Origin: Octopus bimaculoides
Lineage: Eukaryota
Assembly: GCF_001194135.2 (NCBI RefSeq)
Contig: NC_068991.1
Location: 61,302,322-61,342,578, forward strand
DNA: 40,257 nt
Direction of reading: 5' to 3'
Numbering within the stretch: position 1 is the first letter of the stretch; the number at the start of each line of letters is the position of its first letter. The notes beneath the pieces are model-generated. The model ran no database searches and had not been told where the DNA came from. It was given only the letters and a program-made list of their open reading frames with translations. This document shows positions 1,990 to 38,389 of the stretch, in pieces. Both the position numbers and the translations under genes were made by a program.

Positions 1990-3190
1990 CATCAGTTCAT
2001 TGTGTAAGATTGCATTGAATGAATTATCTTTAGTCTATGTTGTAAGGTGAAGTACTCAATACTTGAAAGAGTGGAGATAGTGGAAGCTTATGAGACAGCA
2101 GGTTCTGTTAAGCAAACGAGTGAAATTTTTGAAGACGAGTTTCCAGGTAAAGGCATACCAGCAAAGATAACAATACAAATGTTGGTTAAGACGGCAAGCT
2201 GTCAGAATCGTTAGCACGCCGGGCAAAATGCTTAGCGGTATTTCGTCTGCTGTTACGTTCTGAGTTTAAATTCCACCGAGGTCGACTTTGCCTTTCATCC
2301 TTTCAGGGTTGATAAATTAAGTACCAGTTATGCACTGGGGCTGATGTAATCGACTTAATCTCTTTGTCTGTCCTTGTTTGTCCCCTCTGTGTGTAGCCCC
2401 TTGTGGACAATAAAGAAATAAGAAACATTAGCATGCCGGGCAAAATGCTGAGCAGTATTTTGTGTCTTTATGNNNNNNNNNNTAATCGACTTAATCTCTT
2501 TGTCTGTCCTTGTTTGTCCCCTCTGTGTGTAGCCCCTTGTGGACAATAAAGAAATAAGAAACATTAGCATGCCGGGCAAAATGCTGAGCAGTATTTTGTG
2601 TCTTTATGTCCTGAGTTCAAATTCGACTGAGGTCAACTTTGCCTTTCATCCTTTCAGGGTCGATAAATTAAGCACCAGTTGCATACTGGGGTCGATCTAA
2701 TTGACTACCCCCCCCCCCAAAAAAAAAATTGGGGGCCTTGTGCCTAAAGTAGAAAAGAATACAAATGTCGGTTAAGAAGTGGTACACTATAGGGTCAGTG
2801 TACAACACCCAAAAACAAAGAAACCCTACAATTCAAATGCAGGAAGTTATTCAGGACATTTGGCAAAGGATTACTCCAAGTCCAGAAAAGTCAATATGTA
2901 ACTTGGCACAGCAGTCCCACATAAGCAGGAGGTCATGCTAATGGGTGTTGAAAAGTCTAAAGTTGAAGCCATATCATTTTGCATGTGCTCAGCAATTAGA
3001 AGTGAATGACAAGAGCAAATGAGTAAATTACTGCCCATGGCTTCTGAATAGCATTGCTAATGATGAGCTACACCCATTCCAGTGAATAGTGAGTAATGAG
3101 GCATGGTTTCCTCTTTCCAGCCATGTAAATTCTTAATATACATGGTACTAGGTGGTGGAGAATCCTCACCTTGTATATGCGCAGCTGCTC
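1990..3190 (+). mobile_element. Decayed Tc1/mariner-superfamily transposase (DUF4817-type N-terminal HTH plus first catalytic block), split by a SINE
   Basis: 2044-2190 reads VKYSILERVEIVEAYETAGSVKQTSEIFEDEFPGKGIPAKITIQMLVK. It resumes at 2777 as KWYTIGSV...LKLKPYHF...SNEAWFPLSSHVNS...ENPH with several in-frame stops. Confidence 0.8.
2191..2757 (+). mobile_element. Head-to-tail dimer of a tRNA-derived SINE (B box GTTCAAATT, core GCCTTTCATCCTTTC-GGGTCGATAAATTAAG-ACCAG, Nin/Sauria-like)
   Basis: Two head-plus-core units, flanked by a 19-bp TSD AATACAAATGT(T/C)GGTTAAG at 2172-2190 and 2758-2776. Includes a 126-bp gap-flank duplication. Confidence 0.85.
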
Positions 3191-3365
3191 AGTCAACTCA
3201 GCTGTAAATGGGTGGCCCTGCAATGGACTGGTGTTCTGTTCAGGTCTAATGTTGATCTGCCCACCTACAGCAGGGTGTTAGGAAGGGCATCCAGCCATAA
3301 AAAAAACATGTCAAAGCAAATACTGGAGTTTGACACAGCCCTGTGGCTTGCTGGATCCTGTTGAA
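3185..3365 (+). mobile_element. 3' part of a SINE with a CTCAGCTGTAAATG core and an RTE-like tail
   Basis: GTCAACTCAGCTGTAAATGGG and GTTAGGAAGGGCATCCAGCC motifs; related to 32820-33060. Confidence 0.5.
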
Positions 3366-3453
3366 CCTTTCTTAAATTTCCCTGGTGCTGTTGCTGCTAC
3401 TGCAGCCACAGCTGCTCCCGATGATAATGTTCATAGTCTGTAATTATACACTT

Positions 3454-4730: not shown

Positions 4731-4802
<72 letters not shown>
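4731..4802. repeat. (TA)n microsatellite
   Basis: Pure TA run. Confidence 0.95.
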
Positions 4803-4805
<3 letters not shown>

Positions 4806-5785
4806 TCATCATCATCATCATCGTTTAACATCTGCTTTCCATGCTAGCATGGGTTGGATGATTTGACTGAGGACTGGCGAACCAGATGGCTGCACCAGGC
4901 TCCAATCTGATCTGGCAGAGTTTCTACAGCTGGATGCCCTTCCTAATGCCAACCACTCCGAGAGTGTAGTAGGTGCTTTTACGTACCACCGCCATGAGGG
5001 CCAGTCTGGCAGTACTGGCAACGGCCACGCTCAAATGATGTTTTTACGTGCCACCTGCACAGGAGTCAGTCCAGCAGTGCTGGCAATAACCTTGCTCGAA
5101 TGTTTTGTTCACATGCCACCGGCACAAGGACCAGTAAGGCAACGCTGGTAACGATCACGCTCAAATGGTGCTTTTTATGTGTCACCGGCATGGAAGCCAG
5201 ACAACAGCTCTGGCAGTGATCATGCTCGGATGGTGCTCTTAGTGCTCCACTGGCACAAGTGCCAGTCATCAAATTTGGTTCAGTTATGATTTCACTTGCC
5301 CCAACAGGTCTTCACAAGCAGAGTTTAGCGTCCAATGAAGGAAGGTTGGCATGGGTGCCAGTCATCGAATTTGGTTTGATTTCAATTTCATTTGCCTCAA
5401 CAGGTCTTTGCAAGCAGGATTTTGTGTCCAAAGAAGGAAGGTACGCATAAGTGGGCTGGCTACATCCCTGGTAAAGGCCACGAGTTATGGTCACACTTGT
5501 CTTGCCGGGTCTTCTCATGCAGAGCATATTTCCAAAGGTCTCAGTCACTAGTCATTGCCTCGGTAAGGCCTAATGTTCGAAGGTCATGCTTCACCACCTC
5601 AACCCAGGTCTTCCTGGGTCTAGTTCTTCCACAGGTACCCTCAACTGCTAGGGTGTGGCACTTTTTTACACAGCTATCCTCATCCATTCTCGCCACATGA
5701 CCATACCAGTGCAATCGTCTCTCTTGCACACCACAACTGATGCTTCTTAGGTTCAACTTTTCTCTCAAGGTACTTACACTCTATC
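4803..5785 (-). mobile_element. 5'-truncated RTE-clade LINE: ORF C-terminus, 3'UTR with internal tandem subrepeats, (GAT)n tail
   Basis: ORF 5541-5768 ERRLHWYGHVARMDEDSCVKKC...EGTCGRTRPRKTWVEVVKHDL is the RTE C-terminal motif. The tail GTTAGGAAGGGCATCCAGCTGTAGAAAC ends in (GAT)n. Confidence 0.85.
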
Positions 5786-6058: not shown

Positions 6059-6520
6059 TAGATCGCCCAATCAAGAAAAATATCGGCGTCATGAAACTAA
6101 GCAGTGTTAACATATAATCACAATTTAGGTTAGTTGATATATGTTTGTCACATATTTCAACTAAATTATGACAATACATAAACATTGCTTCGCTACATTA
6201 CTCCAATATGTATATATATNNNNNNNNNNNNNNNNNNNNNNNNNNNNNNNNNNNNNNNNNNNNNNNNNNNNNNNNNNNNNNNNNNNNNNNNNNNNNNNNN
6301 NNNNNNNNNNNNNNNNNNNNNNNNNNNNNNNNNNNNNNNNNNNNNNNNNNNNNNNNNNNNNNNNNNNNNNNNNNNNNNNNNNNNNNNNNNNNNNNNNNNN
6401 NNNNNNNNNNNNNNNNNNNNNNNNNNNNNNNNNNNNNNNNNNNNNNNNNNNNNNNNNNNNNNNNNNNNNNNNNNNNNNNNNNNNNNNNNNNNNNNNNNNN
6501 NNNNNNNNNNNNNNNNNNNN

Positions 6521-6862
6521 GCCTTTCTGGCACTTGTGCTTGCAGCATGTGTAAGAACTTTTGAGCGAGATCGTTGCCAGTGCCCCTGGACTGGCTCTTG
6601 TGCGAGTGGCACATAAAATACACCATTTTGAGCATGGCCATTGCCAGTACCGCCTGACTGGCCTTCGTGCGCGTAACACGTAAAAGCACCCACTACACTC
6701 TCTGAGTGGTTGGCGTTAGGAAGGGCATCCAGCTGTAGAAACTCTGCCAAATCAGATTGGAGCCTGGTGTAGCCATCTGGTTTCACCAGTCCTCAGTCAA
6801 ATCGTCCAACCCATGCTAACATGGAAAGCGGGCGTTAAACAATGATGATGATGATGATGATA
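6521..6862 (+). mobile_element. RTE-derived 3'UTR/tail element ending in (GAT)n
   Basis: Near-identical to the tails at 4803-5000, 19289-19454, 34085-34276 and 37648-37830. Confidence 0.8.
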
Positions 6863-7121
6863 TTTTTATATACATATATATTTATATATATATACACACA
6901 CACATATGTTGGTTAGATGAGTTATAGGTTAAAACAACCATCTAAGGGATAGAAGTATCAATTGCACTACTGGTATATCACCTATGTTCAACCGTAGGCA
7001 TCCAAATGCAAGCATGTTATGCTCATAAATTATAGGTAAAGACAAGGATAAACATGGGTTTATCAAGAATCAAAATTTAAAGAAGACAGAAAATGGAGAA
7101 GTACTGATGAACATCAATTGA

Positions 7122-9960: not shown

Positions 9961-9977
9961 AAAATATACAAATATAA

Positions 9978-10138
9978 TGCGTCTTTCAATTTCTGTCTAC
10001 CAAATCCATTCACAGGGCTTCGGCCAGCCTGTGGCTATAGTAGAAGACATTTGCCCATGGTGTTATGCGGTGGACCCAAGACTGAACCCCAGACCACATG
10101 GTTAAGAAGCAAGCTTCTCTACCACACAGCCACACGTG
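9978..10138 (-). mobile_element. 5' half of the CTTGGGCAAGTG-family SINE
   Basis: Reverse complement of GGCTGTGTGGTAG-GAAGCTTGCTTCTTAACCATGTGG...GGGCAAATGTCTTCTACTATAGCC. Confidence 0.75.
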
Positions 10139-10339
10139 CATCTATTAATAATAACAACAAGAACAAAAACAACAACAACATGCATATGCCTCCAGGATTG
10201 TTCAACAAATGCCAGATTATTGAGTTGTAATTATTTTAACTGTCTTAATTACTTCAGTCACCAATCCTACAGAATATTCTAATTAAAGGATTTTTACACC
10301 TGTCTTTTATTTTGTTGATTTAACTTTACACAACTGATG

Positions 10340-11215: not shown

Positions 11216-11427
11216 AAGTCAATGACTGAAAGTCTATATGGTTGCACAAAAGGCTAAAAATAGCAGTTAAATATCTCTTATGTTATGTTGGACCATCTTA
11301 GAAGAAAAATCTGAAGACATACATTAGATAATGTATCGGACCAAACAAAGGGAGACCTAAAGATTGAACAGCAGCAGCAGCAGCAATAACAGCAGCAACA
11401 TTGACAAGATAAGAGCAACAACAGATG

Positions 11428-11590
11428 CAGGCTTGGCTGTGTGGTTAAGAAGCTTGCTTTTCAACCATGTGGCTTCAGGTTCAGTCCTACTGCACAGCAT
11501 CTTGGACAAGTGCCTCCTACTATAGCCCCAAGATGACCAATGCCTTGTGAGTGGATGGAAACTGTACAGAAGCCTGTTGTACACACACAC
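11428..11590 (+). mobile_element. 5' half of the CTTGGGCAAGTG-family SINE
   Basis: GGCTGTGTGGTTAAGAAGCTTGCTTT...GGTTCAGTCC...CTTGGACAAGTG...CCTTGTGAGTGGA. Confidence 0.75.
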
Positions 11591-11704: not shown

Positions 11705-12669
11705 AGTCAAGGGAAGCCAGGATACTTTGGGTGTTCTATCTCTTGGTCTGTGGATCATAGCAGTAGATCCAGCTTTCATGACAAGCCACTAGATACCTGA
11801 GTGCTCTTGGATTGGAGGTAACAAGCTCAACTATCTCCCTGCTATCACCTATGCATCTTTCATTCTGTTCATCACTGAACACACTGGGAACAAACTTAGT
11901 ACAAATTTTATTCATCTTCAAATCTTCATGAATAATTCTGTGTACAGTTGTCTCATTTTTCTTATTCCATTATTATCCACAGGGGTCTAAACATAGAGGG
12001 GACAAACAAGGACAGACAAAAGGATAAAGTCGATTACATCAACCCCAGTGTTTCACTGGTACTTATTTAATTGACCCCAAATGGATGAAAGGCAAAGTTG
12101 ACCTCAACGGAATTTGAACTCAGAATGTAATGGCAGACGAAATACCACTAAGCATTTTGCCTCGCATGCTAACATTTCTGCCTGTATGCTTATTGTCCTT
12201 ATAAACACATCATAGTCTTCATCCAGAAAATTGCTAATCTTCTCAACCAGCTCTGATGTTCTGATGTCCTTCCAATTCCCACCCCTCTCATCATCTCTCA
12301 CATCCTCTCTACCTTCCTTGAACCTCTTATTCCAGTGATAAACAGATGCTCAGCTCATACAAGTTAATCCTTAAGCAGTTTGGAGCATTCCATAAGTTTC
12401 TGTACTGATTTTTAGCTCAGTTTAAATGCAAACCGTTATTGCTTAGCAAGCTTCTAAATTGTCCTCCAATTGCATTCTGCAATCTAGTCAGATGTGACAA
12501 GCTGTGTTTACCAGAATGTGTTCAAAGTCCTGCTACAGCCGTCTCTTTCAATCTGTAATAACAAAATTTGGCAGGTCAGCTTATTAGATGTATAGTAAAA
12601 TTACAATAATCAAGAGTGGCTATAACTGCTGATCCTAAAAAAGTCTCAAAGCTTCTGGAATGCACCTTG
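11705..12669 (-). mobile_element. 5' two-thirds of a decayed mariner, interrupted by a SINE
   Basis: TIR-like start (TA)CAAGGTGCATTCCAGAAGCTTTGAGAC ending at 12669. Motifs WNKRFKEGREDVRDDERGG, TVHRIIHEDLKMNKICTKFVP and HESWIYCYDPQTKR. Confidence 0.85.
11955..12183 (-). mobile_element. Nin/Sauria-like-core tRNA SINE inserted into the mariner
   Basis: Same head, core and tail as 18480-18711 and the first unit at 2191. Confidence 0.85.
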
Positions 12670-18434: not shown

Positions 18435-18969
18435 AATAAGTACACACACTAGATATTTGTTCTTCACTTGTTTATTATTTATTTCTTTATTGCCCACAGG
18501 GGGCTAAACATAGAAGGAACAAACAAAGACTGACAAAGGGATGAAGTCGATTACATCGACCCCAATGTGTAACTGGTACTTATTTAATCGACCCCAAAAG
18601 AATGAAAGGCAAAGTTGACCTTGGCGGAGTTTGAACTCAGAATGTAACAGCAGATGAAATACCGCTAAGCATTTCACCTGGCGTGCTAACGTTTCTGCCA
18701 GCTCGTCGCCCTGTTTATTATTGTTCTTATTTTATGTCCTTTGTCTGGAAATTTTTTGTTACACATCCTGTGACCTCTTCAGCTATGCTCCATCCCATGT
18801 GTTTCCTCTTGAATAGGAGTAGACACATGGGATGGAGGGTTCTGAACAGGAGGAGAAACATGGGATGGAGGTTCGATGAAGAGATCACAGGATCTGTAAT
18901 GAAAGATTTCCAGACAAACGACACAAAATAAGAACAATAATAAATAAGTGAAGAACGAACATGTGTATG
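18435..18969. mobile_element. Foldback/MITE-like palindromic insert with a 12-bp TSD
   Basis: TGTTATGGGAAG at 18423-18434 and 18970-18981. The arms 18714-18810 and about 18845-18944 are reverse complements, and the left arm continues to the left of the nested SINE. Confidence 0.75.
18480..18711 (-). mobile_element. Complete Nin/Sauria-like-core SINE with an 11-bp TSD
   Basis: Head GGCGACGAGCTGGCAGAAACGTTAGCACGCC and B box GAGTTCAAACTCC. TSD TGTTTATTATT at 18469-18479 and 18712-18722. Confidence 0.9.
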
Positions 18970-19288: not shown

Positions 19289-19454
19289 TACTACACTCTC
19301 TGAGTGGTTGGTGTTAGGAAGGGCATCCAGCTGTAGAAACTCTGCCAAATTTAGATTGGAGCCTGGTGTTGCCATCCGGTTTCACCAGTCCTCAGTCAAA
19401 TCGTCCAACCCATGCTAGCATGGAAAGCGGACGTTAAACGATGATGATGATGAT
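19289..19454 (+). mobile_element. Young RTE-tail fragment inserted into the GVHQG codons of the older RTE
   Basis: Near-identical to 34085-34276; flanked by GTAG at 19285-19288 and 19455-19458. Confidence 0.85.
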
Positions 19455-20618
19455 GTAGGGTTCACCATGGTTCAGATCTCAGTTCTCTTCTGCTCATCAT
19501 AGTCCTCCAGACCATAATTGAATTTGTGGTATAATTAGAGAAATTCCTGGTGCAGAAGCAAAATTTGGAACCAAAATGTCTCAATGTTAATTTTGCAAAG
19601 ACTACAGTGTTAATAAGTAGGATAGGAAAGCAAACAGAGCCCAGCTTCCATCAGGGAAATGGCCTTGCTATATATGTTGAAAAGGAGTGGATAGAAATTC
19701 CATACAGTATACTCAGTGTAAATTATGGATGCACAAAAGGAACAATAGAATCATATACAGGTTAACAGAATCCGTGTATACAGAAGATGTGTAGGTGCTA
19801 TAAACACCAAGATTACTTGGGAAATAGTTTTTCTCAAATGCCCAGGAAGATCTTTAGAAGTAGTAGGTAGCTTCTTTTAGTGAGATGGCCTCATTAGTAG
19901 TGGAGGAAGATGTTCTGAAAGCATAGTAGCCAGAGTAAGAGCAGGCTGGAGAAAGTTTAGGGAGCTGTTACTTCTGTTGGTAATAAACCTTTTTTTTTTT
20001 TAAGAAAGGCTGCTTGTGTGTGAACAGCAGTGTTACATGGTAGTGAGACGTGATCTTTGAATGCAGAAGACTTGCAAAAACTTGAAAGAAATGAAGCAAG
20101 CAAGTTCCAGTGGATGAGCAATGTCAATATAGATGAACAGCAGAATACAAATGCATTGAGAGAAAAAAGCTGGGCATAAGAGAAATTAGATGTTGGGTGT
20201 AAGTGAAAAGATTGCACTGGCATGGGAACGTGATGCATATGTATGAGAGTAGCTCTATAAAGAAAGTTCAATCACCTGTAGCAGATGTAACCTGTGGAAG
20301 AGGGAAATGTTGGAAGAGATGAGATGAAGTGCCTTTTCATATCTGTTAACCACTCTCAACACACGCTCATATCTGCTGTTGATACCTCCCCCCACACACA
20401 ATAGCCACCACAATGTACCACTGAGCTCCACCTATGTCCTTGTGCATTTCTCTCTCTCTCTCTCTACTCTATCCTGCAATTCATCTCCCTATTTTCTGAT
20501 CTGTCTTCAAGTCTATTATACTTCTGCCCTCCACCCTTTCTGTACTGTCACTTATCACCTCCTCCTTCCTGAGCTATTTCTTTTACCTTCTTCCCTATCC
20601 TGATATTTATCGGCTGTT

Positions 20619-20701: not shown

Positions 20702-20844
20702 ATTCACTTCTGCCCTCATCACTAACTATCTTTCTCTCTTTTCACCTGCATTTACGAACCTATCTACCCCACCCCTAATATGTATGTATGTATTCTGTAT
20801 GTATGTATGTATGTATGTATGTATGTATGTATGTATGTATGTAT

Positions 20845-21530
20845 GTCTCTTCTATTTTTCTAATTATTATAAATCTTCCACTGTCGAGGGAGCTAGTTTC
20901 CAACAAAGATACAAGGCTCTATCTTTGGGATGTAATTAACAGACAAATTCACATTTGGAACTTGAGAAAAGTCTTGCATATTTTTACTGTTCCGCTCACA
21001 GATTGCACTTGTAATGTACGAATTAGCTGATCGATTTCTCTTTCTGAAAATCTCAGTTCATCCATATTCTCCTTTAAGCATTTACTAACAAAACCTAGTG
21101 CTCCAATTATTATTGGTAGGAATATGAATTCATAATTTGGATATAGAAGATGGAAGTTTCGAAGCAGTTGACCATAGATATCCTCTTTTTCTTTGATTTT
21201 CAAGGAGATATTTATATCTACAGGGCAGCTGACCTCTATGACAGTACATACCATTGTCCCTCTGTCCCAAACAACAATATCCGGCCTGTTAAGTTTACAT
21301 TTGACCGAAGTTTTGATGGGAATATTCCACCAGTATTCCTTGAGTTGGTGTTTATGAATGTATTCCATAGCAGAGGGATTTTCTAAGTTTATTTCAGGAC
21401 AGTCTTTTCTGCAGATGGCATTGTAAATTGTTTTAGCAACAACATCGTGCCGTATAGGGAGGTAGTACTGTGATGACATTTTAGGACAGCTGCTAATCTC
21501 ATACGTGTTGTCTTCCACAGAAACATGACA
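20845..21530 (-). mobile_element. 5'-truncated R4/Dong-type (R2 group) non-LTR retrotransposon: partial CCHC knuckle, restriction-like endonuclease, 3'UTR
   Basis: Uninterrupted frame CHVSVEDNTYEISSC...RHDVVAKTI...WWNIPI...NRPDIVVWDR...IEVSCPVDINI...KEKEDIY...PIIIGALG, stop at 20949. Flanked by (TATG)n on both sides. Confidence 0.85.
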
Positions 21531-22999: not shown

Positions 23000-23496
23000 G
23001 ATGGTAGTGATGATGATGATAATAATGATGATGATGATGATGATGACGACGATGATGATGACGATGTTGTAGCTGTTGTTGTTACTTTTAATGATGATGA
23101 TGATGACAACGACGACGACGACGGCGGCGGTGGTGGTGGTGGTGGTGGTGGTAGTGGTGGTGATGATGATGACGATGATAATGCTGTTGTTGTTACATTT
23201 AATGATGATGATGATANNNNNNNNNNNNNNNNNNNNNNNNNNNNNNNNNNNNNNNNNNNNNNNNNNNNNNNNNNNNNNNNNNNNNNNNNNNNNNNNNNNN
23301 NNNNNNNNNNNNNNNNNNNNNNNNNNNNNNNNNNNNNNNNNNNNNNNNNNNNNNNNNNNNNNNNNNNNNNNNNNNNNNNNNNNNNNNNNNNNNNNNNNNN
23401 NNNNNNNTGGTAGTGGTGGTGATGATGATGACGATGATAATGCTGTTGTTGTTACATTTAATGATGATGATGATGATAATGATGATGATGATGATA

Positions 23497-23536
<40 letters not shown>

Positions 23537-23770
23537 CGATGTTGCAGCTGTTGTTGTTACTTTTAATGATGATGATGATGACAACGATGACGACGACGGC
23601 GGCGGTGGTGGTGGTGGTGGTGGTGGTAGTGGTGGTGATGATGATGACGATGATAATGCTGTTGTTGTTACATTTAATGATGATGATGATAATAATGATG
23701 ATGATGTTATTGTTGTTGTTATTTTTAATGATGATGATGATGATGATGATGATGTTGTTGTTATTGTTGT
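23000..23770. repeat. (GAT)/(GAC)/(GGT)/(GTT) compound repeat with a higher-order period of about 216 bp
   Basis: TGGTAGTGGTGGTGATGATGATGACGATGATAATGCTG recurs at 23149, 23408 and 23624; spans gap 23217-23407. Confidence 0.85.
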
Positions 23771-24116
23771 TATTTCAGCACCGCAAAATTAGTTTTCATA
23801 ATTTCCGATTAAATTGGCCATCTTCAAAAGCAGTCAAACCTTACTTGCTTTCTAATTTATTCCACTAGAGTGAGCTTGCAAAAACACCCATCGATTTTAT
23901 AGTGCTCTCACTGTCTACAGTGATGAAGTATGCAAGTGTGCATCTTGCCTTGAGGTCATGTCTTTCAGAAAAGGCTGTAAAGTGGAATTGCTCTCTATTC
24001 CAAGACAGACCAAAACATGTGTGTCTAGAATACAAAAATCTTACAGCAGACCCTATGTTTTTGATTGGCAGCCTTGATGCTGTAGGTCTGCAAGAGCAGA
24101 ACATATTGAGGGCTAC

Positions 24117-24130
24117 TCAGCAACAACAGC

Positions 24131-24173
<43 letters not shown>

Positions 24174-24299
24174 GCAGCAGCAGTAACAGCAGCAACAATA
24201 GCACTAATAATAATGTTTTCTAAGATGGGTAAAAGGCCTGAAATTTTGTGGGTGGGGACTAGTCAATTACATTGACGCCAGTGTTTCGTTGGTATTTAG

Positions 24300-24362
<63 letters not shown>

Positions 24363-24372
24363 TGATAATAAT
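24117..24372. repeat. (CAG)n tract (24117-24200) and (AAT)n tract (24303-24372)
   Basis: Directly visible. Confidence 0.9.
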
Positions 24373-24895: not shown

Positions 24896-24906
24896 AATAA
24901 TAATAC

Positions 24907-24947
<41 letters not shown>

Positions 24948-27900
24948 TTAATAATGTTTTCTACTAGAAGCACAAAGCCTGAAACATTTTAAGGGAGATT
25001 AGTAGATTATATCGAAACTAGTGTTTACATGGTGCATCTTTTATCAAACCTGAAAGGATGAAAGGTAAAGTCGACACTGGTGGAATTTGAACACAGAATG
25101 TAAATATGGATAAAAGGATGCTAAGCATTTTGTCTGGGGTTCAAATGATGCCATCAGCTCACAACCTTTGTAATATAGGCACAAGGCCTGAAATTTCGGG
25201 AAAGGGGATGAGTCGATTAGATCGAACCCAGTGCGTAACTGGTACTTATTTCATCAACCCTGAATGGATGGAAATCAAAGTTGACCATGGTGGAATTTGA
25301 ACCCAGAACGCAGCAGTAGACAAAATACCACTAAGCATTTTCCCTGGTGTGCTAACGATTCTTTTGTAATATAGGCACAAGGCCTGAGATTTCGGGGAAG
25401 GGGATGCGTGGATTAGATCGACCCCAGTGCGTAACTGGGACTTATTTCATCAACCCTGAATCTTTGGAAAGCAAACTGGACCATAGTGGAATTCGAACGC
25501 AGCTCACAACCTTTGTAATATAGGCACAAGGCCTGAAATTTCGGGAAAGGGGATGAGTCGATTAGATCGAACCATGGTGGAATTTAGACCCAGAACGGAG
25601 AAGCAGACGAAACACCACAAAGCGTTTCACCTGGAATGCTAACGATACTTTTGTAATATAGGTACAAGGCCTGAAATTTCGGTGAAGGGATTGAGTCGAT
25701 TAGATCGACACCAGTGCGTTTGAATCCAGAACGCAGCAGCCGACGAAATAATACTCAACATTGCACCTGGTATGATAACAATTTTTTGGAATATAGGCAC
25801 AAGTACTGAGATTTCGCGGAAGGCGATGAGTCGATTAGATCGACCCCAGTGCGTAATTGGTACATATTTCAACAAACATGATTGGATGGAAAGCAAAGTC
25901 GACCATGGTGGAATTTGAACCCAGAACGCAGCAGCAGATAAATAAAACTAAGCATTTCACCTGATATGCTAAAGGTGCTTTTGTAATATAGGCACAAGGC
26001 CCGAATTTTCGGGGAAGGGGATGAGACGATTAGATCGACGCCAGTGCGTAACTGGTACTTATTACATCAACCCAGAGTAGATGGAAAGCAAAGTGGACCA
26101 TGGTGGAATTTGAACCCAGAAGGCAGCAGCAGACGAAATACCACTAAGAATTTCACCTGGTATTCTAATGAATCTTTTGTAATATAGGCACAAGGCCCTA
26201 AATTTCGGGGAAGGGGATGAGTGGATTAAATCGATCCCAGTACGTAACTGGTACTTATTACATCAAACCTGAATTGATGGAAAACAATGTCGACTATGGC
26301 GGAAATTGAGCCCAGAACGCAGCAGCAGACGAAATACCACTAAGCATTTCATCTGGTATGCTAACAATTTTTTGGAATATAGGCACAAGGCTTGAAATTT
26401 TGGTGAAGGGGTTGAGTCGATTAGATCGACCCCAGTGCGTAACTGGTACTTATTTCATCAGCCCTGATTGGATGGAAGACGAAATACCACTAAGCCTTTC
26501 ACCTGGCATGATAACGATTCTTTTGTAATATAGGCACAAGTACTGAGATTTCGGGGAAGGGGAGGAATCGATTAGATCGACACCAGTGCGTTTGAACCCA
26601 GAACGCAGCGCCCGAAGAAATAATACTAAGCATTGCACCTGGTATGATAAAGATACTTTTTGTAATATAGGCACAAGTCCTGAAATTTCGGGAAAGGGGA
26701 TGAGTCGATTAGACCGACCCCAGTGCGTAACTGGTACTTATTTCATCAACCCTGATTGGATGAAAAGCAAAGTGGACCGTGGCGGAATTTGAACCCAGAA
26801 CGCAGCAGCAGACGAAATACAGCTAAGCATTTCATCTTGTGTGCTAACGATTATTTTGTAATATAGGCACAATGCTTGAAATTTCGGGGAAGGGGATGAG
26901 ACGATTAGATCAACTCCAGTGCGTAACTGGTACTTATTACATCGACCCTGAATAGATGGAAAGAAAAGTGGACCATGGTGGAATTTGGACCCAGAACGGA
27001 GAAGCAGACGAAATACCACTAAGCATTTCATCTGGTATGCTAACGATTCTTTTGTAATATAGGCACAAGGCTTGACATTTCGGGAAAGGGGTTGAGTCGA
27101 TTAGATCGACCCCAGTGCGTAACTGGTACTTATTTCATCAACCCTGATTGGATGGAAAGCAAAGTGGACCATGGTGGAATTTGGACCCAGAACGGAGAAG
27201 CAGACGAAACATCACTAAGCATTTCATCTGGTATGCTAACGATACTTTTGTAATATAGGCACCAGGCCTGAAATTTCGGTGAAGTGATTGAGTCGATTAG
27301 ATCGACACCAGTGCGTTTGAATCCAGAACGCAGCAGCCGACGAAATAATACTCAACATTGCACCTGGTATGATAACAATTTTTTGGAATATAGGCACAAG
27401 GTCCGAAATTTCCGGGGAGGGGATGAGTCGATTAGATCGACCCCAGTTCGTAACTGGTACTTATTTCATCAACCCTGAATGGCTGGAAAGCAATGTGGAG
27501 TAAGGTGGAATTTGAACCTAAAACGCATCAGCAGACGAAATACCACTAAGAATTTCACCTGGTACGCTAACGATTCTTTTGTAATATAGGCACAAAGCCC
27601 GAAATTTCGGTGAAGGGGTTGAGTATTAGATCGACCCCAGTGCGTAACTGGTACTTATTTTATCTACCCTGAATGGTTGGAAAGCAAAGTGGACCAAGGT
27701 GGAATTTGAACCCAGAACGCAGCAGCAGACGAAATACCACTAAGCATTTCATCTGGTATGCAAACAATTTTTTGGAATATAGGCACAAGGCTTGAAATTT
27801 CGGGGAAGGGATTGAGTCGATTAGATCGACACCAGTGCGTAACTGGTACATATTTCATCAAATATGATTGGATGGAAAGCAAAGTCGACCATGGTGGAAT

Positions 27901-28375
27901 TTGAACCCAGAACGCTGTAGCAGATAAATAACACTAAGCATTTCACCTGATATACTAAGGGTGCTTTTGTAATATAGGCACAAGGCCCGAAATTTCGGGG
28001 AAGGGGATGAGACTATTAGATGGAAACCAGTGCGTAACTGGTACTTATTACATCAACCCTGAATAGATGGAAAGCAAAGTGGACCGTGGTGGTATTTGGA
28101 CCCAGAACGGAGAAGCAGACGAAATACCACTAAGCATTTCATCTGGTATACTAACGATTCTTTTGTAATATAGGCACAATGCCTGAAATTTTGGTGAAGG
28201 GATTGAGTCGATTAGATCGACACCAGTGCGTAACTGGTACATATTTCATGAAACATGATTGGATGGAAAGCAAAGTCGACCATGGTGGAATTTGAACCCA
28301 GAACGCAGCAGCAGACGAAATACCACTAAGAATTTTGACCGGTGTGCTAACGATTCTGCCAGCTCACTATCTTAG
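24896..28375 (-). repeat. Tandem array of about 19 copies of a Nin/Sauria-like-core SINE body (unit mostly 193-196 bp; deletion variants 135-151 bp)
   Basis: The (T/G)AATATAGG anchor occurs at 25171, 25367, 25516, 25654, 25789, 25984, 26180, 26375, 26526, 26663, 26859, 27055, 27251, 27386, 27582, 27775, 27970 and 28166, plus a diverged unit at 24961. One (ATT)n tail on the left, one intact SINE head on the right. Confidence 0.95.
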
Positions 28376-28414
28376 CAATAGCAATAACAATAACAATAAT
28401 GATTATAATAATAG

Positions 28415-28525
28415 TTTCAGATTTTGGCACAAGGTCAGCAATTCTGAGGAAAGGTTAAGTCAATTATATAATTAATATTTATTTTAGTTTATTGACCCTC
28501 AAAGGACAACAGGCAAAGTTGACCT
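28415..28525 (-). mobile_element. Diverged fragment of the same SINE family
   Basis: GGCACAAGG...TTGACCCTCAAAGGA...GGCAAAGTTGACCTCAG. Confidence 0.6.
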
Positions 28526-28539
28526 CAGTGAAATCTGAA

Positions 28540-28645
28540 AAGCTTATATATATATATCTATATATTTATCTATCTATCTATCTGTCTGTCTCTCTATCTA
28601 CATATCTATCTACCTACATTTTTACCTACCCATCTGTCTGTCTAG

Positions 28646-28890: not shown

Positions 28891-29277
28891 AGGAGTGGCT
28901 GTGTGGTAAGTTGCTTGCTTACCAACCACATGGTTCCGGGTTCAGTTTCACTGCGTGGCACCTTGGGCAAGTGTCTTCTACTATAGTCTCGGGCCGACCA
29001 AAGCCTTGTGAGTGGATTCGGTAGACGGAAACTGAAAGATGCCCGTCGTATATATGTATATGTATATATATATATGTGTGTGTGTTTGTCCCCCCCAACA
29101 TTGCTTGACAACCGATGCTGGTGTGTTTACGTCCTCGTAACTTAGCGGTTCGGCAAAAGAGACCGATAGAATAAGTACAAGGCTTACAAAGAATAAGTCC
29201 TGGAATAGATTTGCTCGACTAAAGGTAGTGCTCCAGCATGGCAGCAGTCAAATGACTGAAACAAGTAAACAAGTAAC
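28891..29277 (+). mobile_element. Full-length young CTTGGGCAAGTG-family tRNA SINE with an 8-bp TSD
   Basis: Head AGGAGTGGCTGTGTGGTAAG...CCGGGTTCAG, core CACCTTGGGCAAGTGTCTTC. AAGTATAT at 28883-28890 and 29278-29285. Confidence 0.9.
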
Positions 29278-29614
29278 AAGTATATGTTAACCAAAATACA
29301 CGTGAAAATTGAGGATTGTATATATTTCTGTCTGTCAACCTGTCTGTCAGTTTCTCTTTCTTTCTATATATATATATGCATGTGTTTGTGTGTGTGTGCA
29401 TGTGTATGCATGTGTATAACAAATGTATTCAGAGAGTAAACTATACTTTTATTGTCAAATAGTGCCTTTCCATTTGCACACACACACACACACTCACAGA
29501 CACAAAGACACACACACATAGATACATACATCATCATCATCATCGTTTAACGTCCACTTTCCATGCTGGCATGGGTTGGACGGTTTGACTGAGGACTGTG
29601 AGTGTACATATGTA

Positions 29615-31566: not shown

Positions 31567-31601
<35 letters not shown>

Positions 31602-31770
31602 ACACACATACACACATACACAAACATATACAAACGATGGGCTTCTTTCAGTTTCTATTAACCAAATCCACTCGCAAGGCTTTGGTTGGCCCAAGGCTAT
31701 AGTAGAAGACGCTTGCTCAAGGTACCATGCAGTAGGACTGAACCTGGAACCATGTGGTTGTGAAGCAAGC
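31320..31770 (-). mobile_element. Full-length diverged CTTGGGCAAGTG-family SINE
   Basis: Reverse complement of the 28891-29277 sequence, with an internal (CA)n tract. Confidence 0.8.
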
Positions 31771-32019
31771 TTTTTGTTTTTTAGAATCCTACTAACGGCA
31801 AAAAATAAGGTTGTGTTATCGCTTCCTCTGTCTTTGTTCTCTTTTCTTTTCTATTCCAATATTCTAGCATATCTATAGTTGGTAGGGACACTGCATTTTG
31901 TTTGTGCAGCCATAATATACTCCCAGTATATTGTGGTTGCATGACAAAATATAATGCCCTTACCAGCAATTAATTTGTATGTACCAGTTTCTAGGAATGT
32001 GTTTAATATGTAAAAATTG

Positions 32020-34084: not shown

Positions 34085-34276
34085 CTTCGTGCCGGTGGCA
34101 CGTAAAAGCACCCACTACACTCTCGGAGTGGTTGGCATTAGGAAGGGCATCCAGCTGTAGAAACCCTGCCAAATCAGATTGGAGCCTGGTGTAGCCATCC
34201 GGTTCACCAGTCCTCAGTCAAATCGTCCAACCCATGCTAGCATGGAAAGTGGATGTTAAACGATGATGATGATGAT
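34085..34276 (+). mobile_element. RTE-tail element inserted next to (TACA)n
   Basis: CGTGCCGGTGGCACGTAAAAGCACCC...GTTAAAC(GAT)n. Confidence 0.85.
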
Positions 34277-34745
34277 ATAATAAATATTAGTAATGGAAGC
34301 AGTTTTAATACCAGATGCCTATGTATTTATAAATGTTTTTATATATTTTTAAATATCTAAGTGTTTTTAAATATTCTATGTGCTTATATTCTGACCTCTA
34401 AATTTTTATTCCTCCATAGTATATCGTGTGAACTTATAACTCACTATGTTTTATATAATATCAATGTTTTTATATCTTATGTGTATATTTTGTACTTATT
34501 TTACTTATATATTTTTTAAAATGCTTATGTATTTATAAATGTTTTTAGATATAATATTTTTAGATATTTACGGGCTTATAAAAATATGTATATGTCTATA
34601 TGCCTGTATCTTATTAATACTTCTGTTATGTTGAGCTTTATGCCACTTTATTAATGCCAAAGTAAGTGTGTATATATATATTGTATATTCTGCTGGATAA
34701 TAGGTCATGTCCCTCTAGTTTTCCGCTCATATTGCCTCCACTCAA

Positions 34746-35390: not shown

Positions 35391-35859
35391 ATATAGGTAC
35401 TTGCACACACACAGACCTGCACGTAAATCTCCACAAATGAATGCCATCATAAGATTAAGTTTAATATCAAGTATGTATGTAAACACAAAATCATATATGC
35501 AGACATATGGAAGTTAATTAAAGATAATGGCAAAAATAAGAAATCATAAGACGAAAAAACTGGAATGAGACAGGTGAACAGAGTTACATGTATAGTTATA
35601 AATGCATAAATTTATATGTATGTGTGTAACCCACACATACACACACTCACACGCACATATACATGCATTTAAAGTCTTGGGTATATAGAAAAATGTAACA
35701 TGAAAATATATTCTTTTATTCTTTTATTCTTTTATTTGTTTCAGTCATTTTGACTGCTGCCATGCTGGAGCACCGTCTTTAGATTTCCTTTCAAAGAGTA
35801 TTACATTCATGAAACGATCGTAATATATCTCAAACCATTTAAATAATCATACTTTATAT

Positions 35860-36063
35860 ATCTTTTATTCTTTTACTTGTTTCAGTCTTTTGACTGTGGC
35901 CATGCTGGAGCACCACCTTTAGTCAAGCAACTCGACCCCAGGACTTATTCTTTGTAAGCCTAGTACCTATTCTATTGGTCTCTTTTTTTGTTGAACCGCT
36001 AAGTTACAGGGACATAAACACACTAACATCGATTGTCAAGCGATGGTGGGGAGACAAACACAG

Positions 36064-36096
<33 letters not shown>

Positions 36097-36262
36097 CATA
36101 CGACAAGCTTCTTTAAGTTTCCGTCTACCAAATCCACTCACAAGGCTTTGGTCAGCCCGAGGTTATAGTGGAAGATACTTACCCAAGGTGCCACACAGTG
36201 GGACTGAACCCAGAACCATGTGGCTGGTAAGCAAGCTACTTACCACACAGCCACTCCTGCAC
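35860..36262 (-). mobile_element. Full-length young CTTGGGCAAGTG-family SINE (a second 3' fragment lies at 35705-35785)
   Basis: Close reverse complement of 28891-29277. Confidence 0.9.
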
Positions 36263-37191: not shown

Positions 37192-37647
37192 ATCTAAACC
37201 AATTAATAACATTGCTGGTATTATACTATAGGCCTAGTTTAAGTTTGAGACTAAGTTGAGGTATGATCCTACCCAGTAGTACTTTGCTTCTTCTGCCAAT
37301 ATCTAATCTAGATAGGCAAATCAGATGAACAGAAAGTTTGGCAATAAAGTTGTCCTTGTGATCCTTGAGATTGATTTATGGGGATCCAGACTTGAAAGGC
37401 TACAAACCCTTACTCTAATTTAATATTACTAGTTAATCCCGCTTCGTTTGTAGTTAACGATGACTTCTCAAAGAAATTCAATTTCCCTCTCTAGATAACT
37501 CATTAGAAGATGTATGCATAGATTATGCAACACTTTCATTCTCAACAAACACTAGTTCCTATTAAACAATTCCTATCACTTCTTATTTATTCCTAGTTCA
37601 TCAAAATTTCATAAGAATATCGCCTTCCTTTCTCTTTTGGACCGTAT

Positions 37648-38105
37648 TCATCATCATCATCATCATCATCATTTAACGTCCACTTTCCATGCTAGCATGG
37701 GTTGGCCGATTTGACTGGGGAATGGCAAACCAGATGGCTACACCAGACTCCAATCTGATCTGGCAGAGTTTCTACAGCTGGATGCACTTCCTAATGCCAA
37801 CCACTCCGAGAGTGTAGTGGGTGCTTTTTACATGCCACTGGCACGAGGGCCAAGTCCGGCGGTACTGGCAACGGCCATGCTCAAATGGTGTTTTTTACGT
37901 GCCACCTGCACAGGTGTCAGTCACATGTTTTGTTCACATGCCACCGGCACAAGTGCCAGTAAGGAGAAGCTGGAAACGATCGCGCTCAAATGGTGCTTTT
38001 TACATGCCACTGGCACAGAAGCAAGACTGCTGCTCTGGCAGTGATCCTGCTCAGATGGTGTTGTTAGCGTTCCACTGGCACAGGTGCCAGTCATTAAATT
38101 TGGTT
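37648..38105 (-). mobile_element. RTE 3'UTR/tail element with internal subrepeats and a (GAT)n tail
   Basis: Collinear with 4803-5270. Confidence 0.85.
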
Positions 38106-38389
38106 CGAATTCATTTAACATTATTTCATCTAATTATAATGTTCCCTTGTATACTTTTCCTCCAATTTTATTGTCAAGAACACCAAAAACTGAATCCTGT
38201 ATCACTCCTCTATCTTACTGCTTTGTGACAATGAAAGGATCTGGCTATGATTTGTATGCTCGTTACACCTTCTGCTTCTGATAGTTAACTTATTATTTCA
38301 GTTACTTTCCATTTTCCCTGAGTGTTATGTTATATCCTAACTCTTTACTACCTATGTGTTTTCACTTGGTTTTTCTATATACTCAACGA

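What the first reader, a model, noticed from the sequence alone, without database searches (positions are those of the whole stretch)
24896..28375. One SINE amplified in place into a 3.4-kb satellite of about 19 units
Seen: a single (ATT)n tail at the left, a single intact head (GAGCTGGCAGAATCG, A box) at the right, and about 19 bodies of about 196 bp between them. Internal units keep the B box but start at GAATCGTTAGC, so they lose half of the A box. The junction ...ACAAAAGAATCGTTAGC overlaps tail-like AAAAGAAT and head AGAATC. Inference: a microhomology junction created a repeat unit that expanded by unequal exchange or rolling circle, i.e. a satellite caught at birth. Pol III from the only intact promoter would meet its first T4 near 27520, so a multimeric transcript of about four units is conceivable. 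An array of B boxes could also act as a TFIIIC or insulator cluster.
Basis: partly seen in the sequence, partly recalled or inferred. Interest (0 to 1): 0.7.

Follow-up and report, generated by a model that had tools for sequence, protein, structure and literature searches.

The report
Decayed tandem array from one SINE
One short retroposon (SINE) of an octopus-type genome has been copied head-to-tail 18 times in place into a 3.2-kb mini-satellite; such SINE-derived arrays are already known from clams and reptiles, and this one is old and decaying, not newborn.

Summary
The repeat is real. On the minus strand, 28373..25167 holds 18 head-to-tail units of a 196-nt monomer. The monomer is an octopod SINE without its first ~16 nt and without its (ATT)n tail. 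Only the first unit has the full head.

The junction ACAAA[AGAAT]CGTTAGC lies in a 5-nt motif that canonical copies carry both in the head (GGCAGAATCG) and at the body/tail boundary (GAAAAGAAT-TATT).

Three corrections:
- The (ATT)n tail at the left belongs to a separate, more diverged SINE copy (25168..24957). That copy has its own full head.
- A third head fragment lies inside the array.
- Six of the 18 units carry internal deletions.

The array is not "caught at birth". Units are 80-98% identical (mean 86%). Interspersed unit subtypes and 91-98% identical multi-unit blocks show repeated unequal exchange over a long time.

A TSD-flanked SINE dimer at 2192-2757 has the same kind of truncated-head junction, so this junction type recurs.

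The architecture matches tandem SINE multimers in a blood clam and SINE-derived satellites in squamates. It is a new member of a known kind. Whether the junction occurs elsewhere in the genome could not be tested. The Pol III and TFIIIC ideas remain untested.

The parts
25167..28373 (-). The tandem array proper: 18 head-to-tail SINE-derived units (u01-u18). The consensus unit is 196 nt.
   Evidence: TRF, blastn of a unit against the window, segmentation and alignment. Pairwise identity 80.5-97.8%, mean 85.7%.
28161..28373 (-). u01, the only array unit with the complete SINE head (AAGATAGTGAGCTGGCA at 28373..28357, then the 196-nt unit). The B-box-like motif GGTTCAAATTCC is intact.
   Evidence: The head aligns with canonical heads of dispersed copies in the window and in O. 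vulgaris.
27039..27055 (-). Example of the canonical internal junction, ACAAA[AGAAT]CGTTAGC. The SINE 3' end is joined to head position ~12-16 through the shared AGAAT.
   Evidence: Canonical 3' ends ...GAAAAGAAT and head GGCAGAATCG in independent copies.
27246..27380 (-). u06, a 135-nt unit with a deletion of unit positions 67-125 that removes the B box. The same deletion is in u10 (26521-26657) and u15 (25649-25783). u06 and u15 are 98% identical.
26370..26520 (-). u11, a 151-nt unit with a different internal deletion (positions 45-88).
25512..25648 (-). u16, a 137-nt unit with a third deletion (positions 79-138).
25362..25511 (-). u17, a 150-nt unit. It starts with a full-head fragment (GGTTGTGAGCTG) joined directly to unit position ~56.
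25500..25573 (-). A 74-bp exact copy of the boundary between the last array unit and the flanking SINE (identical to 25155-25228). It marks a recent exchange that involved the array edge.
   Evidence: Longest exact match found by script.
27520..27523 (-). First TTTT on the SINE strand downstream of the full head (AAAA on the + strand). This is the first possible Pol III stop, about 850 nt from the head.
24957..25168 (-). u19, an independent and more diverged SINE copy. It has its own complete head and a canonical 3' end (TCTAGTAGAAAAC). It is not an array unit.
   Evidence: 60-71% identical to array units. 71% identical to a rough family consensus, against 82% for the array consensus. It lacks the array-specific 3' end.
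24896..24956 (-). (ATT)n tail, contiguous with u19. Read on the + strand it is (AAT)n.
   Evidence: TRF, sequence.
28378..28540 (-). A 5'-truncated SINE fragment (28540..28415) with its (ATT/GTT/GCT)n tail (28414..28378). The array's head abuts this tail.
2192..2757 (+). Related evidence: a SINE dimer flanked by a single 20-bp target-site duplication (2172-2191 and 2758-2777, 19/20 identical). The second monomer's head is cut at the same motif as in the array (...GAAATAAG|AAACATTAGCA at 2422/2423). An N gap at 2473-2482 is bordered by a 126-bp exact duplicate, which is an assembly artefact.

Best explanation
This is a SINE-derived tandem array, a small and decaying 'SINE satellite', in an octopod genome. 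The monomer is one SINE of the abundant octopus family (head GGCGGCGAGCTGGCAGAATCGTTAGC..., B-box-like GTTCAAATTCC, 3' end ...CCTATAGTAGAAAAGAAT, tail (ATT)n).

Founding event (inferred): the end of the SINE body was joined to position ~12-16 of a SINE head through the 5-nt motif AGAAT, which occurs at both places. This made a 196-nt unit that lacks the first part of the head and the tail. Three routes give the same junction and cannot be told apart here:
- slipped-strand or microhomology-mediated duplication within one resident SINE;
- a 5'-truncated second copy joined by microhomology at the start of the first copy's tail;
- a reverse-transcriptase template switch during one retroposition event.

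Growth (shown by the unit pattern): the array grew and turned over by unequal exchange or replication slippage, in register shifts of one to several units, over a long period. It also accumulated point changes and internal deletions.

Setting: the array lies in a chain of SINEs that sit in each other's (ATT)n tracts. The tail at the left belongs to a different SINE copy.

Function: nothing indicates one. The default reading is a neutral by-product of SINE density plus recombination.
For: REAL TANDEM ARRAY WITH THE STATED ANATOMY
-.

THE MONOMER IS A GENUINE DISPERSED SINE
- The window holds 5 further copies.
- A 20-kb Octopus vulgaris locus holds 7 copies at 72-78% identity.
- Individual copies have target-site duplications: window 18479-18712 with AATAATAAACA, two O. 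vulgaris copies, and the dimer at 2192-2757.

LOCAL DNA-LEVEL AMPLIFICATION OF ONE FOUNDER
- All 18 units share the 3' end CCTATATT[A/C]CAAAA.
- The 17 internal units (u02-u18) have no tails between them. All but u17, which carries a head fragment from the 74-bp patch, share the same head truncation.
- None of 11 dispersed copies has these features.

MICROHOMOLOGY AT THE JUNCTION
- Canonical head GGC[AGAAT]CG. Canonical 3' ends are GAAA[AGAAT] in 2 of 6 copies, with GAATT, AGATT and ACATT in the others.

REPEATED UNEQUAL EXCHANGE
- Subtype clusters {u02,u07,u08,u16}, {u01,u03,u14} and {u06,u10,u15} are interspersed along the array.
- One deletion is shared by u06, u10 and u15. Their divergences range from 2% to 14%.
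- Blocks 25605-25787 and 27202-27384 are 96% identical. Blocks 25719-26018 and 27705-28004 are 91% identical.
- A 74-bp exact patch copies the array edge.

AGE
- Mean pairwise identity 85.7%. Mean identity to the array consensus 91.9%.

PRECEDENT
- The same architecture is described in the clam Scapharca broughtonii: first SINE with a full head, internal units truncated at both ends, last unit with a full tail (PMC11481361).
- SINE-derived satellites with a longer terminal unit are described in squamates (PMC10702118).
Against: - The array's own tail is missing. The last unit ends ...ACAAA and abuts the head of another SINE. The simple model 'one SINE, head at one end, tail at the other' needs an extra event: insertion of u19 at the very start of the tail, or a chimeric founder.
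- No target-site duplication could be identified around the array, because both flanks are (ATT)n-like microsatellite.
- Identity does not fall with distance between units. That fits an early burst, by any mechanism including rolling circle, as well as it fits stepwise exchange.
- The window comes from a gap-rich scaffold with 10 N runs, so the copy number could be mis-assembled.
- Uniqueness of the junction in the genome was not testable.
Confidence: 0.78

Rival explanations
1. The founding multimer, at least a dimer, was made at the RNA/cDNA level in one retroposition event. Either reverse transcriptase switched from the AGAAT of one SINE RNA head to the AGAAT at the 3' end of another SINE RNA, or a read-through transcript of a genomic tandem was retroposed. 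DNA-level exchange only expanded it afterwards. In this reading u19 and the array founder could be parts of one chimeric insertion.
For: - The same window holds a SINE dimer (2192-2757) bounded by one 20-bp target-site duplication. Its second monomer is truncated at the same head motif and joined to the A-rich end of the first. Such junctions are therefore carried by units that retropose as a whole.
- The two monomers of that dimer have different 3' modules, so they came from different templates.
- The array's last unit abuts the exact 5' end of u19 with 2 nt of overlap and no tail. A template jump at an RNA 5' end would give this.
Against: - No target-site duplication is recognisable around the array.
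- All array units share private changes, which is more simply explained by copying of DNA in place.
- The rough family consensus is too heterogeneous to tell whether u19 and the founder are the same age.
Confidence: 0.25
2. The 196-nt unit with this junction is a genome-wide satellite or multimeric SINE family. The window shows only one of many loci, so the junction is not a local event.
For: - In squamates, SINE-derived satellites often occupy many loci (PMC10702118).
- In the clam, 3% of high-scoring SINEs lie in tandem or palindromic structures (PMC11481361).
- A truncated-head junction of the same type occurs a second time in this 40-kb window.
Against: - No other copy of the array-specific junction or of the array-specific 3' end was found in the remaining 36 kb of the window, in 20 kb of O. 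vulgaris or in 20 kb of Argonauta hians. This is a very small sample.
- The second junction in the window joins different modules, so it is not derived from this array.
Confidence: 0.2
3. The array was built by serial independent insertions of 5'-truncated SINE copies into the tail of the previous copy. This would be target-specific retroposition into (ATT)n, not duplication.
For: - Heads of this SINE subtype are often preceded by (ATT)n: u01 and 3 of 5 O. vulgaris heads.
- O. vulgaris L001 6692-7066 is a head-to-tail pair with an (ATT)n spacer.
Against: - Independent insertions would not give the same truncation point at nearly every junction, no tail or target-site duplication between units, and shared private substitutions in all 18 units.
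- The independent pair in O. vulgaris keeps its spacer and a full second head.
Confidence: 0.03
4. The array is functional. It could be a Pol III unit giving multimeric RNA from the single intact head, or a cluster of B boxes bound by TFIIIC that acts as an insulator.
For: - u01 keeps GAGCTGGCAGAATCGTTAGCAC identical to canonical heads, and an intact GGTTCAAATTCC.
- There is no TTTT for ~850 nt.
- 13 of 18 units keep a B-box-like motif.
Against: - Units decay freely, with 8% divergence from the consensus and a third carrying deletions, several of which remove the B box. There is no sign of constraint.
- tRNA or promoter homology could not be shown with Rfam or ARAGORN.
- No expression or binding data are available here.
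Confidence: 0.04
5. The copy number or the array itself is an assembly artefact of a short-read scaffold.
For: - The window has 10 N runs.
- At 2473-2482 a 126-bp exact duplicate flanks a gap, which is a typical scaffolding artefact.
Against: - No N lies inside 24896-28414.
- Units differ from each other by 2-20% and carry distinct deletions. Collapsed or duplicated reads would not produce that.
Confidence: 0.05

Closest known systems
Tandem SINE multimers of the type TSD1-(SINE)n-TSD1 in the blood clam Scapharca broughtonii (Mob DNA 2024, PMC11481361)
   Same: - The host is a mollusc and the element is a tRNA-related SINE.
- The first unit has a complete head but no tail.
- Internal units are truncated at the same point of head and tail.
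- Arrays have 4-15 units there and 18 here.
   Different: - There the last unit carries the complete tail and one target-site duplication brackets the whole array.
- Here the last unit abuts the head of another SINE, the tail belongs to that other copy, and no target-site duplication is recognisable.
- The SINE family and the host class (cephalopod) differ.
SINE-derived satellites (sSat) of squamate reptiles (Mob DNA 2023, PMC10702118)
   Same: - Tandem repeats derived from a SINE, with a longer terminal unit that reaches the SINE terminus.
- Modest arrays, poorly homogenised.
- Proposed origin by initial duplication followed by unequal recombination.
   Different: - Squamate units are usually only part of the SINE, occupy many loci and tend to be subtelomeric.
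- Here the unit is almost the whole SINE. Locus number and chromosomal position are unknown.
Multimeric or dimeric SINEs that retropose as units (Alu; Dip/B1 multimers of jerboas, as cited in PMC10702118)
   Same: - Head-to-tail SINE monomers joined without a full second promoter.
- The TSD-flanked dimer at 2192-2757 of this window is of this kind and shares the junction position with the array.
   Different: - The 18-unit array shows DNA-level block duplications.
- It is far longer than any retroposed multimer described in those sources (up to eight).
Amphibian tRNA-like tandem families (PolIII/TAN of newt, Rana/polIII, Xenopus OAX), as reviewed in PMC10702118
   Same: Tandem units of 200-360 bp that carry Pol III promoter-like boxes. 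Some are transcribed in vitro.
   Different: - Those are abundant genome-wide satellites with no demonstrated SINE parent.
- Here the dispersed parent SINE is evident and the array is small.

Membership tests
SINE (non-autonomous, LINE-dependent retroposon) | Short non-coding element dispersed in many copies, also in related species | tested here: met
   Five further copies in the window. Seven copies in 20 kb of Octopus vulgaris at 72-78% identity.
SINE (non-autonomous, LINE-dependent retroposon) | Individual copies flanked by target-site duplications | tested here: met
   - Window copy 18479-18712: AATAATAAACA on both sides.
- O. vulgaris copies at L001 ~3186-3387 and ~6139-6339.
- Dimer at 2192-2757: 20-bp TSD, 19/20 identical.
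- For the array itself: inconclusive, because the flanks are microsatellite.
SINE (non-autonomous, LINE-dependent retroposon) | Head derived from a Pol III gene (tRNA) with A and B boxes | tested here: inconclusive
   - A B-box-like GTTCAAATTCC and a D-arm-like GAGCTGGCAGAATCGTTAGC are visible.
- Rfam found no tRNA match even at E<=5-10 on the copies tested, and none at gathering thresholds over the whole window.
- ARAGORN found none in the window, and none in a family-consensus head at its normal thresholds.
- The literature classes octopus SINEs as tRNA-Core and tRNA-Deu (PMC8967140). Assigning this family to them is my inference.
SINE (non-autonomous, LINE-dependent retroposon) | 3' simple-repeat tail and a 3' region shared with a partner LINE | tested here: inconclusive
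   - (ATT)n tails occur on several copies.
- No partner LINE was identified.
- The only LINE fragment in the window (20949-21518) ends in (ATAC)n and shares no 3' sequence with the SINE.
Tandem SINE multimer / SINE-derived satellite | Head-to-tail units all derived from one SINE, with the same truncation point at every internal junction | tested here: met
   17 internal junctions at the same position. All but the one that carries the 74-bp patch are variants of ACAAAAGAATCGTTAGC.
Tandem SINE multimer / SINE-derived satellite | Terminal unit(s) extend to the true SINE terminus (full head at the 5' end, full tail at the 3' end) | tested here: inconclusive
   - 5' end: met. u01 has the full head.
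- 3' end: not met. u18 ends at ACAAA and abuts the head of the unrelated copy u19, which owns the (ATT)n tail.
Tandem SINE multimer / SINE-derived satellite | One target-site duplication brackets the whole multimer | tested here: inconclusive
   Both flanks are (ATT)n-like tracts (28378-28414 and 24896-24956). No unambiguous duplication can be read.
Classical satellite DNA | Long arrays at many loci, high copy number, homogenised by concerted evolution, heterochromatic location | not testable with these tools
   - No eukaryotic genome collection was searchable by DNA.
- Within the window the array is only 3.2 kb, units are 86% identical on average, and identity does not depend on distance. This does not look like a homogenised satellite.

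The most novel reading that the evidence does not exclude
In octopods the motif AGAAW, present in both the SINE head and the SINE 3' end, would act as a recurrent switch point. At this point reverse transcriptase, or Pol III read-through followed by retroposition, would make head-to-tail SINE multimers. Such multimers would seed tandem arrays. Arrays with one intact head and no T4 for ~850 nt would in turn produce multimeric RNAs that retropose. SINE families and satellites would then feed each other. The array and the TSD-flanked dimer in the same window would be two stages of that cycle.
Probability: 0.1. Interest if true: 0.55.

Novelty: new member of a known kind. Interest (0 to 1): 0.3.

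Why it matters
It adds a cephalopod example to the short list of documented transitions from SINE to tandem array (squamates, a bivalve). The founding junction can be read to the base: a 5-nt motif shared by the SINE head and the SINE 3' end. A TSD-flanked dimer with the same kind of junction lies in the same window, which hints that the junction is recurrent rather than accidental. Octopus genomes are unusually rich in SINEs, so a genome-wide census of such junctions would be cheap. It could show how often dense SINE populations seed satellites. By itself, one decayed 3.2-kb array with no sign of constraint is ordinary repeat biology.

Tried and rejected
1. tRNA origin of the head. Rfam at gathering thresholds over the whole window found nothing. 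Rfam at permissive E values on the head unit, a clean dispersed copy and the whole O. vulgaris locus found nothing relevant. The only hits were chance bacterial sRNAs and microsatellite 'miRNAs'. ARAGORN found nothing in the window or in a family-consensus head, apart from a meaningless hit at 80% threshold with introns allowed.

2. Finding the junction elsewhere through translated junction-spanning ORFs. A 66-aa consensus ORF across the junction had no candidate in the 5.8-billion-protein collection. Exact look-ups of window ORFs 26738-27031 and 20949-21518 found no contig.

3. Metagenome scan for TANAAAAGAATCGTTAGCA. It gave 28 hits. None contained SINE sequence, so all are chance matches.

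4. Sampling octopus DNA through protein look-ups.
   - Only one O. vulgaris locus and one Argonauta locus could be fetched.
   - The ENA hits belong to other animals without this SINE.
   - The last protein search, with a GPCR-like ORF of L001, returned a single hit and was wasted.

5. The LINE fragment at 20949-21518 as partner of the SINE. Rejected, because its 3' end is (ATAC)n with no similarity to the SINE 3' end. It has no Pfam or PDB match.

6. 'The founder was already old when amplified', argued from CpG-like differences to the family consensus. Dropped, because at least one such difference (CCAGGTGAAATG) is shared with a dispersed copy and so marks a subfamily.

7. Literature. No paper in the held library describes SINE-derived tandem arrays or satellites in cephalopods, and none contains the head sequences.
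Full report
WHAT IS THERE

Tandem Repeats Finder reports overlapping arrays of period 195-196 bp (and 135-137 bp) between 25512 and 28357, with scores of 1045-1450. blastn of one unit against the window tiles 24957-28356 without gaps in coverage.

Read on the minus strand, the region resolves into 18 head-to-tail units (u01-u18, 28373..25167), followed by a nineteenth SINE (u19, 25168..24957) and an (ATT)n tract (24956..24896).
- Twelve units are 193-196 nt long.
- Six units carry internal deletions. u06, u10 and u15 lack the same 59 nt. u11, u16 and u17 each lack a different segment.
- Only u01 starts with the complete head, AAGATAGTGAGCTGGCA.
- The other units start at GAATCGTTAGC or a variant of it (GTATCG, TAATCG, AATTGTT, GCACC), directly after ...CCTATATTACAAAA of the preceding unit.
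- The first TTTT on the SINE strand after the head is at 27523-27520.

CORRECTIONS TO THE OBSERVATION

1. The (ATT)n tail is not the array's tail. It follows u19, which differs from the array units in several ways.
   - It has its own complete head (AAGGTTGTGAGCTGATGGCA).
   - It has the canonical 3' end TCTAGTAGAAAAC, not the array-specific TATATTACAAAA.
   - It is only 60-71% identical to the array units, while these are 80.5-97.8% identical to one another.
   - The last array unit ends ...TATATTACAAA and abuts u19's first base.

2. The head motif GTGAGCTG occurs three times on the SINE strand, at + 28360, 25500 and 25155. The middle one lies in a 74-bp stretch (25500-25573) that is an exact copy of the u18/u19 boundary (25155-25228).

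3. Immediately 5' of u01 lies the (ATT/GTT/GCT)n tail of another, 5'-truncated SINE (28540..28378).

The array is thus embedded in a chain of SINEs that sit in each other's (ATT)n tracts.

WHAT THE MONOMER IS

The unit is a real dispersed SINE.
- The window holds further copies at 2192-2421, 2423-2757, 11952-12182, 18479-18712, 24216-24283 and 28415-28540.
- A LINE-derived ORF in the window (20949-21518, minus strand) has its named relatives in Octopus vulgaris (70% identity) and Argonauta hians.
- The O. vulgaris locus fetched through that relative (OX597815.1, 20 kb) contains seven copies of the same SINE at 72-78% identity to the array consensus.
- Individual copies have target-site duplications.

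Together these copies give three canonical features:
- the head, (AA)GGCGGCGAGCTGGCAGAATCGTTAGCACGCCGGGCAAAATGCTTAGCGG;
- a B-box-like GTTCAAATTCC;
- for the subtype that gave the array, the 3' end GGCCTTGTGCCTATAGTAGAAAAGAAT followed by (ATT)n.

A second subtype shares the head and body but has a different 3' module.

No tRNA homology could be shown with Rfam or ARAGORN. 'A box' and 'tRNA-derived' therefore rest on motif resemblance and on the literature's classification of octopus SINEs as tRNA-Core and tRNA-Deu (PMC8967140).

The window has ten N runs. I infer that this gap density fits a short-read scaffold such as the O. bimaculoides assembly. That assembly has 713,915 contigs for 2.34 Gb according to the table in PMC10700109.

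THE JUNCTION

The canonical head contains GGC[AGAAT]CG. The canonical body/tail boundary reads GAAA[AGAAT]TATT. It is exact in two of six independent copies. The other four read GAATT, AGATT or ACATT.

The array junction ACAAA[AGAAT]CGTTAGC can therefore be assigned to either parent over five bases.

Three routes lead to exactly this product:
- slipped-strand or microhomology-mediated duplication between the two AGAAT motifs of one resident SINE, which lie 196 nt apart;
- a second, 5'-truncated copy whose cDNA end was joined by microhomology at the start of the first copy's tail, or deletion of tail plus head start between two tandem copies;
- a template switch of the reverse transcriptase from one SINE RNA to the 3' end of another.

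A second junction of this kind bears on the choice. At 2192-2757 a full-head monomer of the other subtype is joined to a monomer of the array's subtype, whose head is cut at the same motif (...GAAATAAG|AAACATTAGCA). The pair is bracketed by a single 20-bp target-site duplication, AATACAAATGT[T/C]GGTTAAGA. That dimer was inserted as one unit. Junctions of this type are therefore made at, or survive, the RNA/cDNA stage in this genome.

I cannot decide which route founded the array. I give the RNA-level route about one chance in four.

HOW THE ARRAY GREW, AND ITS AGE

All 18 units share the 3' end CCTATATT[A/C]CAAAA, which none of 11 dispersed copies has. All internal junctions except that of u17 share the same truncation point. 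There is no tail or target-site duplication between units.

This excludes serial independent insertions and shows copying of one founder in place.

The units fall into subtypes that are interspersed along the array: {u02,u07,u08,u16}, {u01,u03,u14} and the deletion subtype {u06,u10,u15}.
- Within the deletion subtype, u06 and u15 are 98% identical, and u10 is 86-87% identical to both. The same variant was therefore copied at very different times.
- 25605-25787 matches 27202-27384 at 96%. 25719-26018 matches 27705-28004 at 91%. Two units are present in one copy of this block and absent in the other.
- The 74-bp exact patch shows that even the array edge was recently involved.

These are the marks of repeated unequal exchange, or slippage, in steps of one to several units.

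Mean identity does not decline with distance between units. It is 84-87% at all lags, with peaks at lags 9 and 11 caused by the block duplication. This is compatible with an early burst by any mechanism, rolling circle included, followed by decay.

Mean pairwise identity is 85.7% (Jukes-Cantor distance 0.16), and units average 8% from the array consensus. For comparison, dispersed copies are 68-86% identical to a rough family consensus.

The array is therefore of middle age on the SINE family's time scale. My rough inference is tens of millions of years, with no calibrated rate. It is not a satellite caught at birth.

FUNCTION

u01 keeps the canonical head from GAGCTGG onwards and an intact B-box-like motif.

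The units decay freely, however. Five have lost the B-box-like motif, and deletions removed or truncated it in four of those. Nothing in the sequence indicates constraint. Transcription, TFIIIC binding and insulator activity remain untested speculation.

COMPARISON WITH WHAT IS KNOWN

The architecture has been described for the blood clam Scapharca broughtonii. [quoted passage not shown]

Squamate reptiles have SINE-derived satellites with a longer terminal unit reaching the SINE terminus. These are explained by initial duplication followed by unequal recombination (PMC10702118).

The present array fits this kind with three differences:
- its 3' terminal unit lacks the tail;
- no bracketing target-site duplication is visible;
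- the host is a cephalopod.

For cephalopods I found no report in the held literature. I therefore rate it a new member of a known kind.

WHAT COULD NOT BE DONE

It could not be run, because no eukaryotic genome collection is searchable by DNA here.

The indirect attempts failed or had negligible power: junction-spanning ORFs, exact ORF look-ups, a metagenome scan, and sampling of octopus loci through proteins.

In the 36 kb of window outside the array, 20 kb of O. vulgaris and 20 kb of Argonauta, the array-specific junction does not recur.

VERDICT

The finding is a genuine, well-delimited SINE-derived tandem array founded at a 5-nt microhomology and remodelled by unequal exchange. It is old and decaying, with no evidence of function.

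The 'at birth' framing and the single-head/single-tail argument are wrong.

Interest 0.3.

Noticed in passing
window 2192-2757 (+), TSDs at 2172-2191 and 2758-2777: A SINE dimer inserted as one unit. A full-head monomer with the 'GTAGCCCCTTGTGGACAATAAAGAAATAAG' 3' module is joined to a head-truncated monomer with the (ATT)n-type 3' module. One 20-bp target-site duplication (19/20 identical) brackets the pair.
   Followed up: partly
window 2347-2608, N gap at 2473-2482: A 126-bp stretch is exactly duplicated on both sides of a 10-N gap (2347-2472 = 2483-2608). This is almost certainly an unmerged contig overlap, that is, an assembly artefact. The window has ten N runs in all.
   Followed up: yes
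window 20949-21518 (-), with 3' UTR and (ATAC)n at 20779-20846: An ORF of 189 aa is the C-terminal part of a non-LTR retrotransposon ORF2. Some relatives carry Pfam zf-RVT, and full-length relatives carry RVT_1. From memory, it contains a PD...E.K-like restriction-endonuclease motif. It ends in an (ATAC)n tail. Relatives are in O. vulgaris (70%), Argonauta hians and many unnamed marine assemblies. It has no Pfam or PDB hit of its own.
   Followed up: partly
window 28373 (u01); L001 ~4296, ~6852, ~17292: Heads of the (ATT)n-tailed SINE subtype are very often directly preceded by (ATT)n-like tracts, even where no SINE body lies upstream. This suggests that the partner LINE targets (TAA)n/(ATT)n repeats. 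From memory, Dong/R4-type elements do this. It would favour head-to-tail SINE chains.
   Followed up: partly
L001 6692-7066 (Octopus vulgaris OX597815.1): A head-to-tail pair of SINEs separated by an (ATT/ATC)n spacer. The second copy has a full head. This looks like an independent insertion into the first copy's tail, and so may be the raw material for tandem arrays.
   Followed up: no
window 4769-5442, 6521-6894, 19289-19455, 34087-34287, 37645-38106: Another dispersed repeat family (84-95% identity between copies). One copy carries internal tandem repeats of 65 bp (4977-5190) and 96 bp (5259-5442). It could be a second example of a mobile element that becomes tandem internally.
   Followed up: no
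window 28891-29285, 35856-36258, 31594-31771, 9964-10145, 11426-11556: A third dispersed repeat family (76-85% identity). One copy lies just to the right of the array.
   Followed up: no
window 25167-28373: Differences between the units and the array consensus are more often transversions than transitions (about 153 against 106). This is unusual for neutral decay. It may reflect AT-biased mutation, alignment effects or sequencing and assembly errors.
   Followed up: no
window 23008-23775 and 24118-24372: Dense microsatellite and minisatellite block just left of the array: (TGA)n with a 51-bp higher-order period, (CAG)n and (TAA)n. 23008-23216 is 98% identical to 23483-23691 across an N gap.
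   Followed up: no
L001 37-711 (+): An unannotated 224-aa ORF in O. vulgaris looks like the C-terminal half of a rhodopsin-type GPCR. Its only relative in the protein collection is a 388-aa Logan-assembled protein at 94% identity.
   Followed up: no
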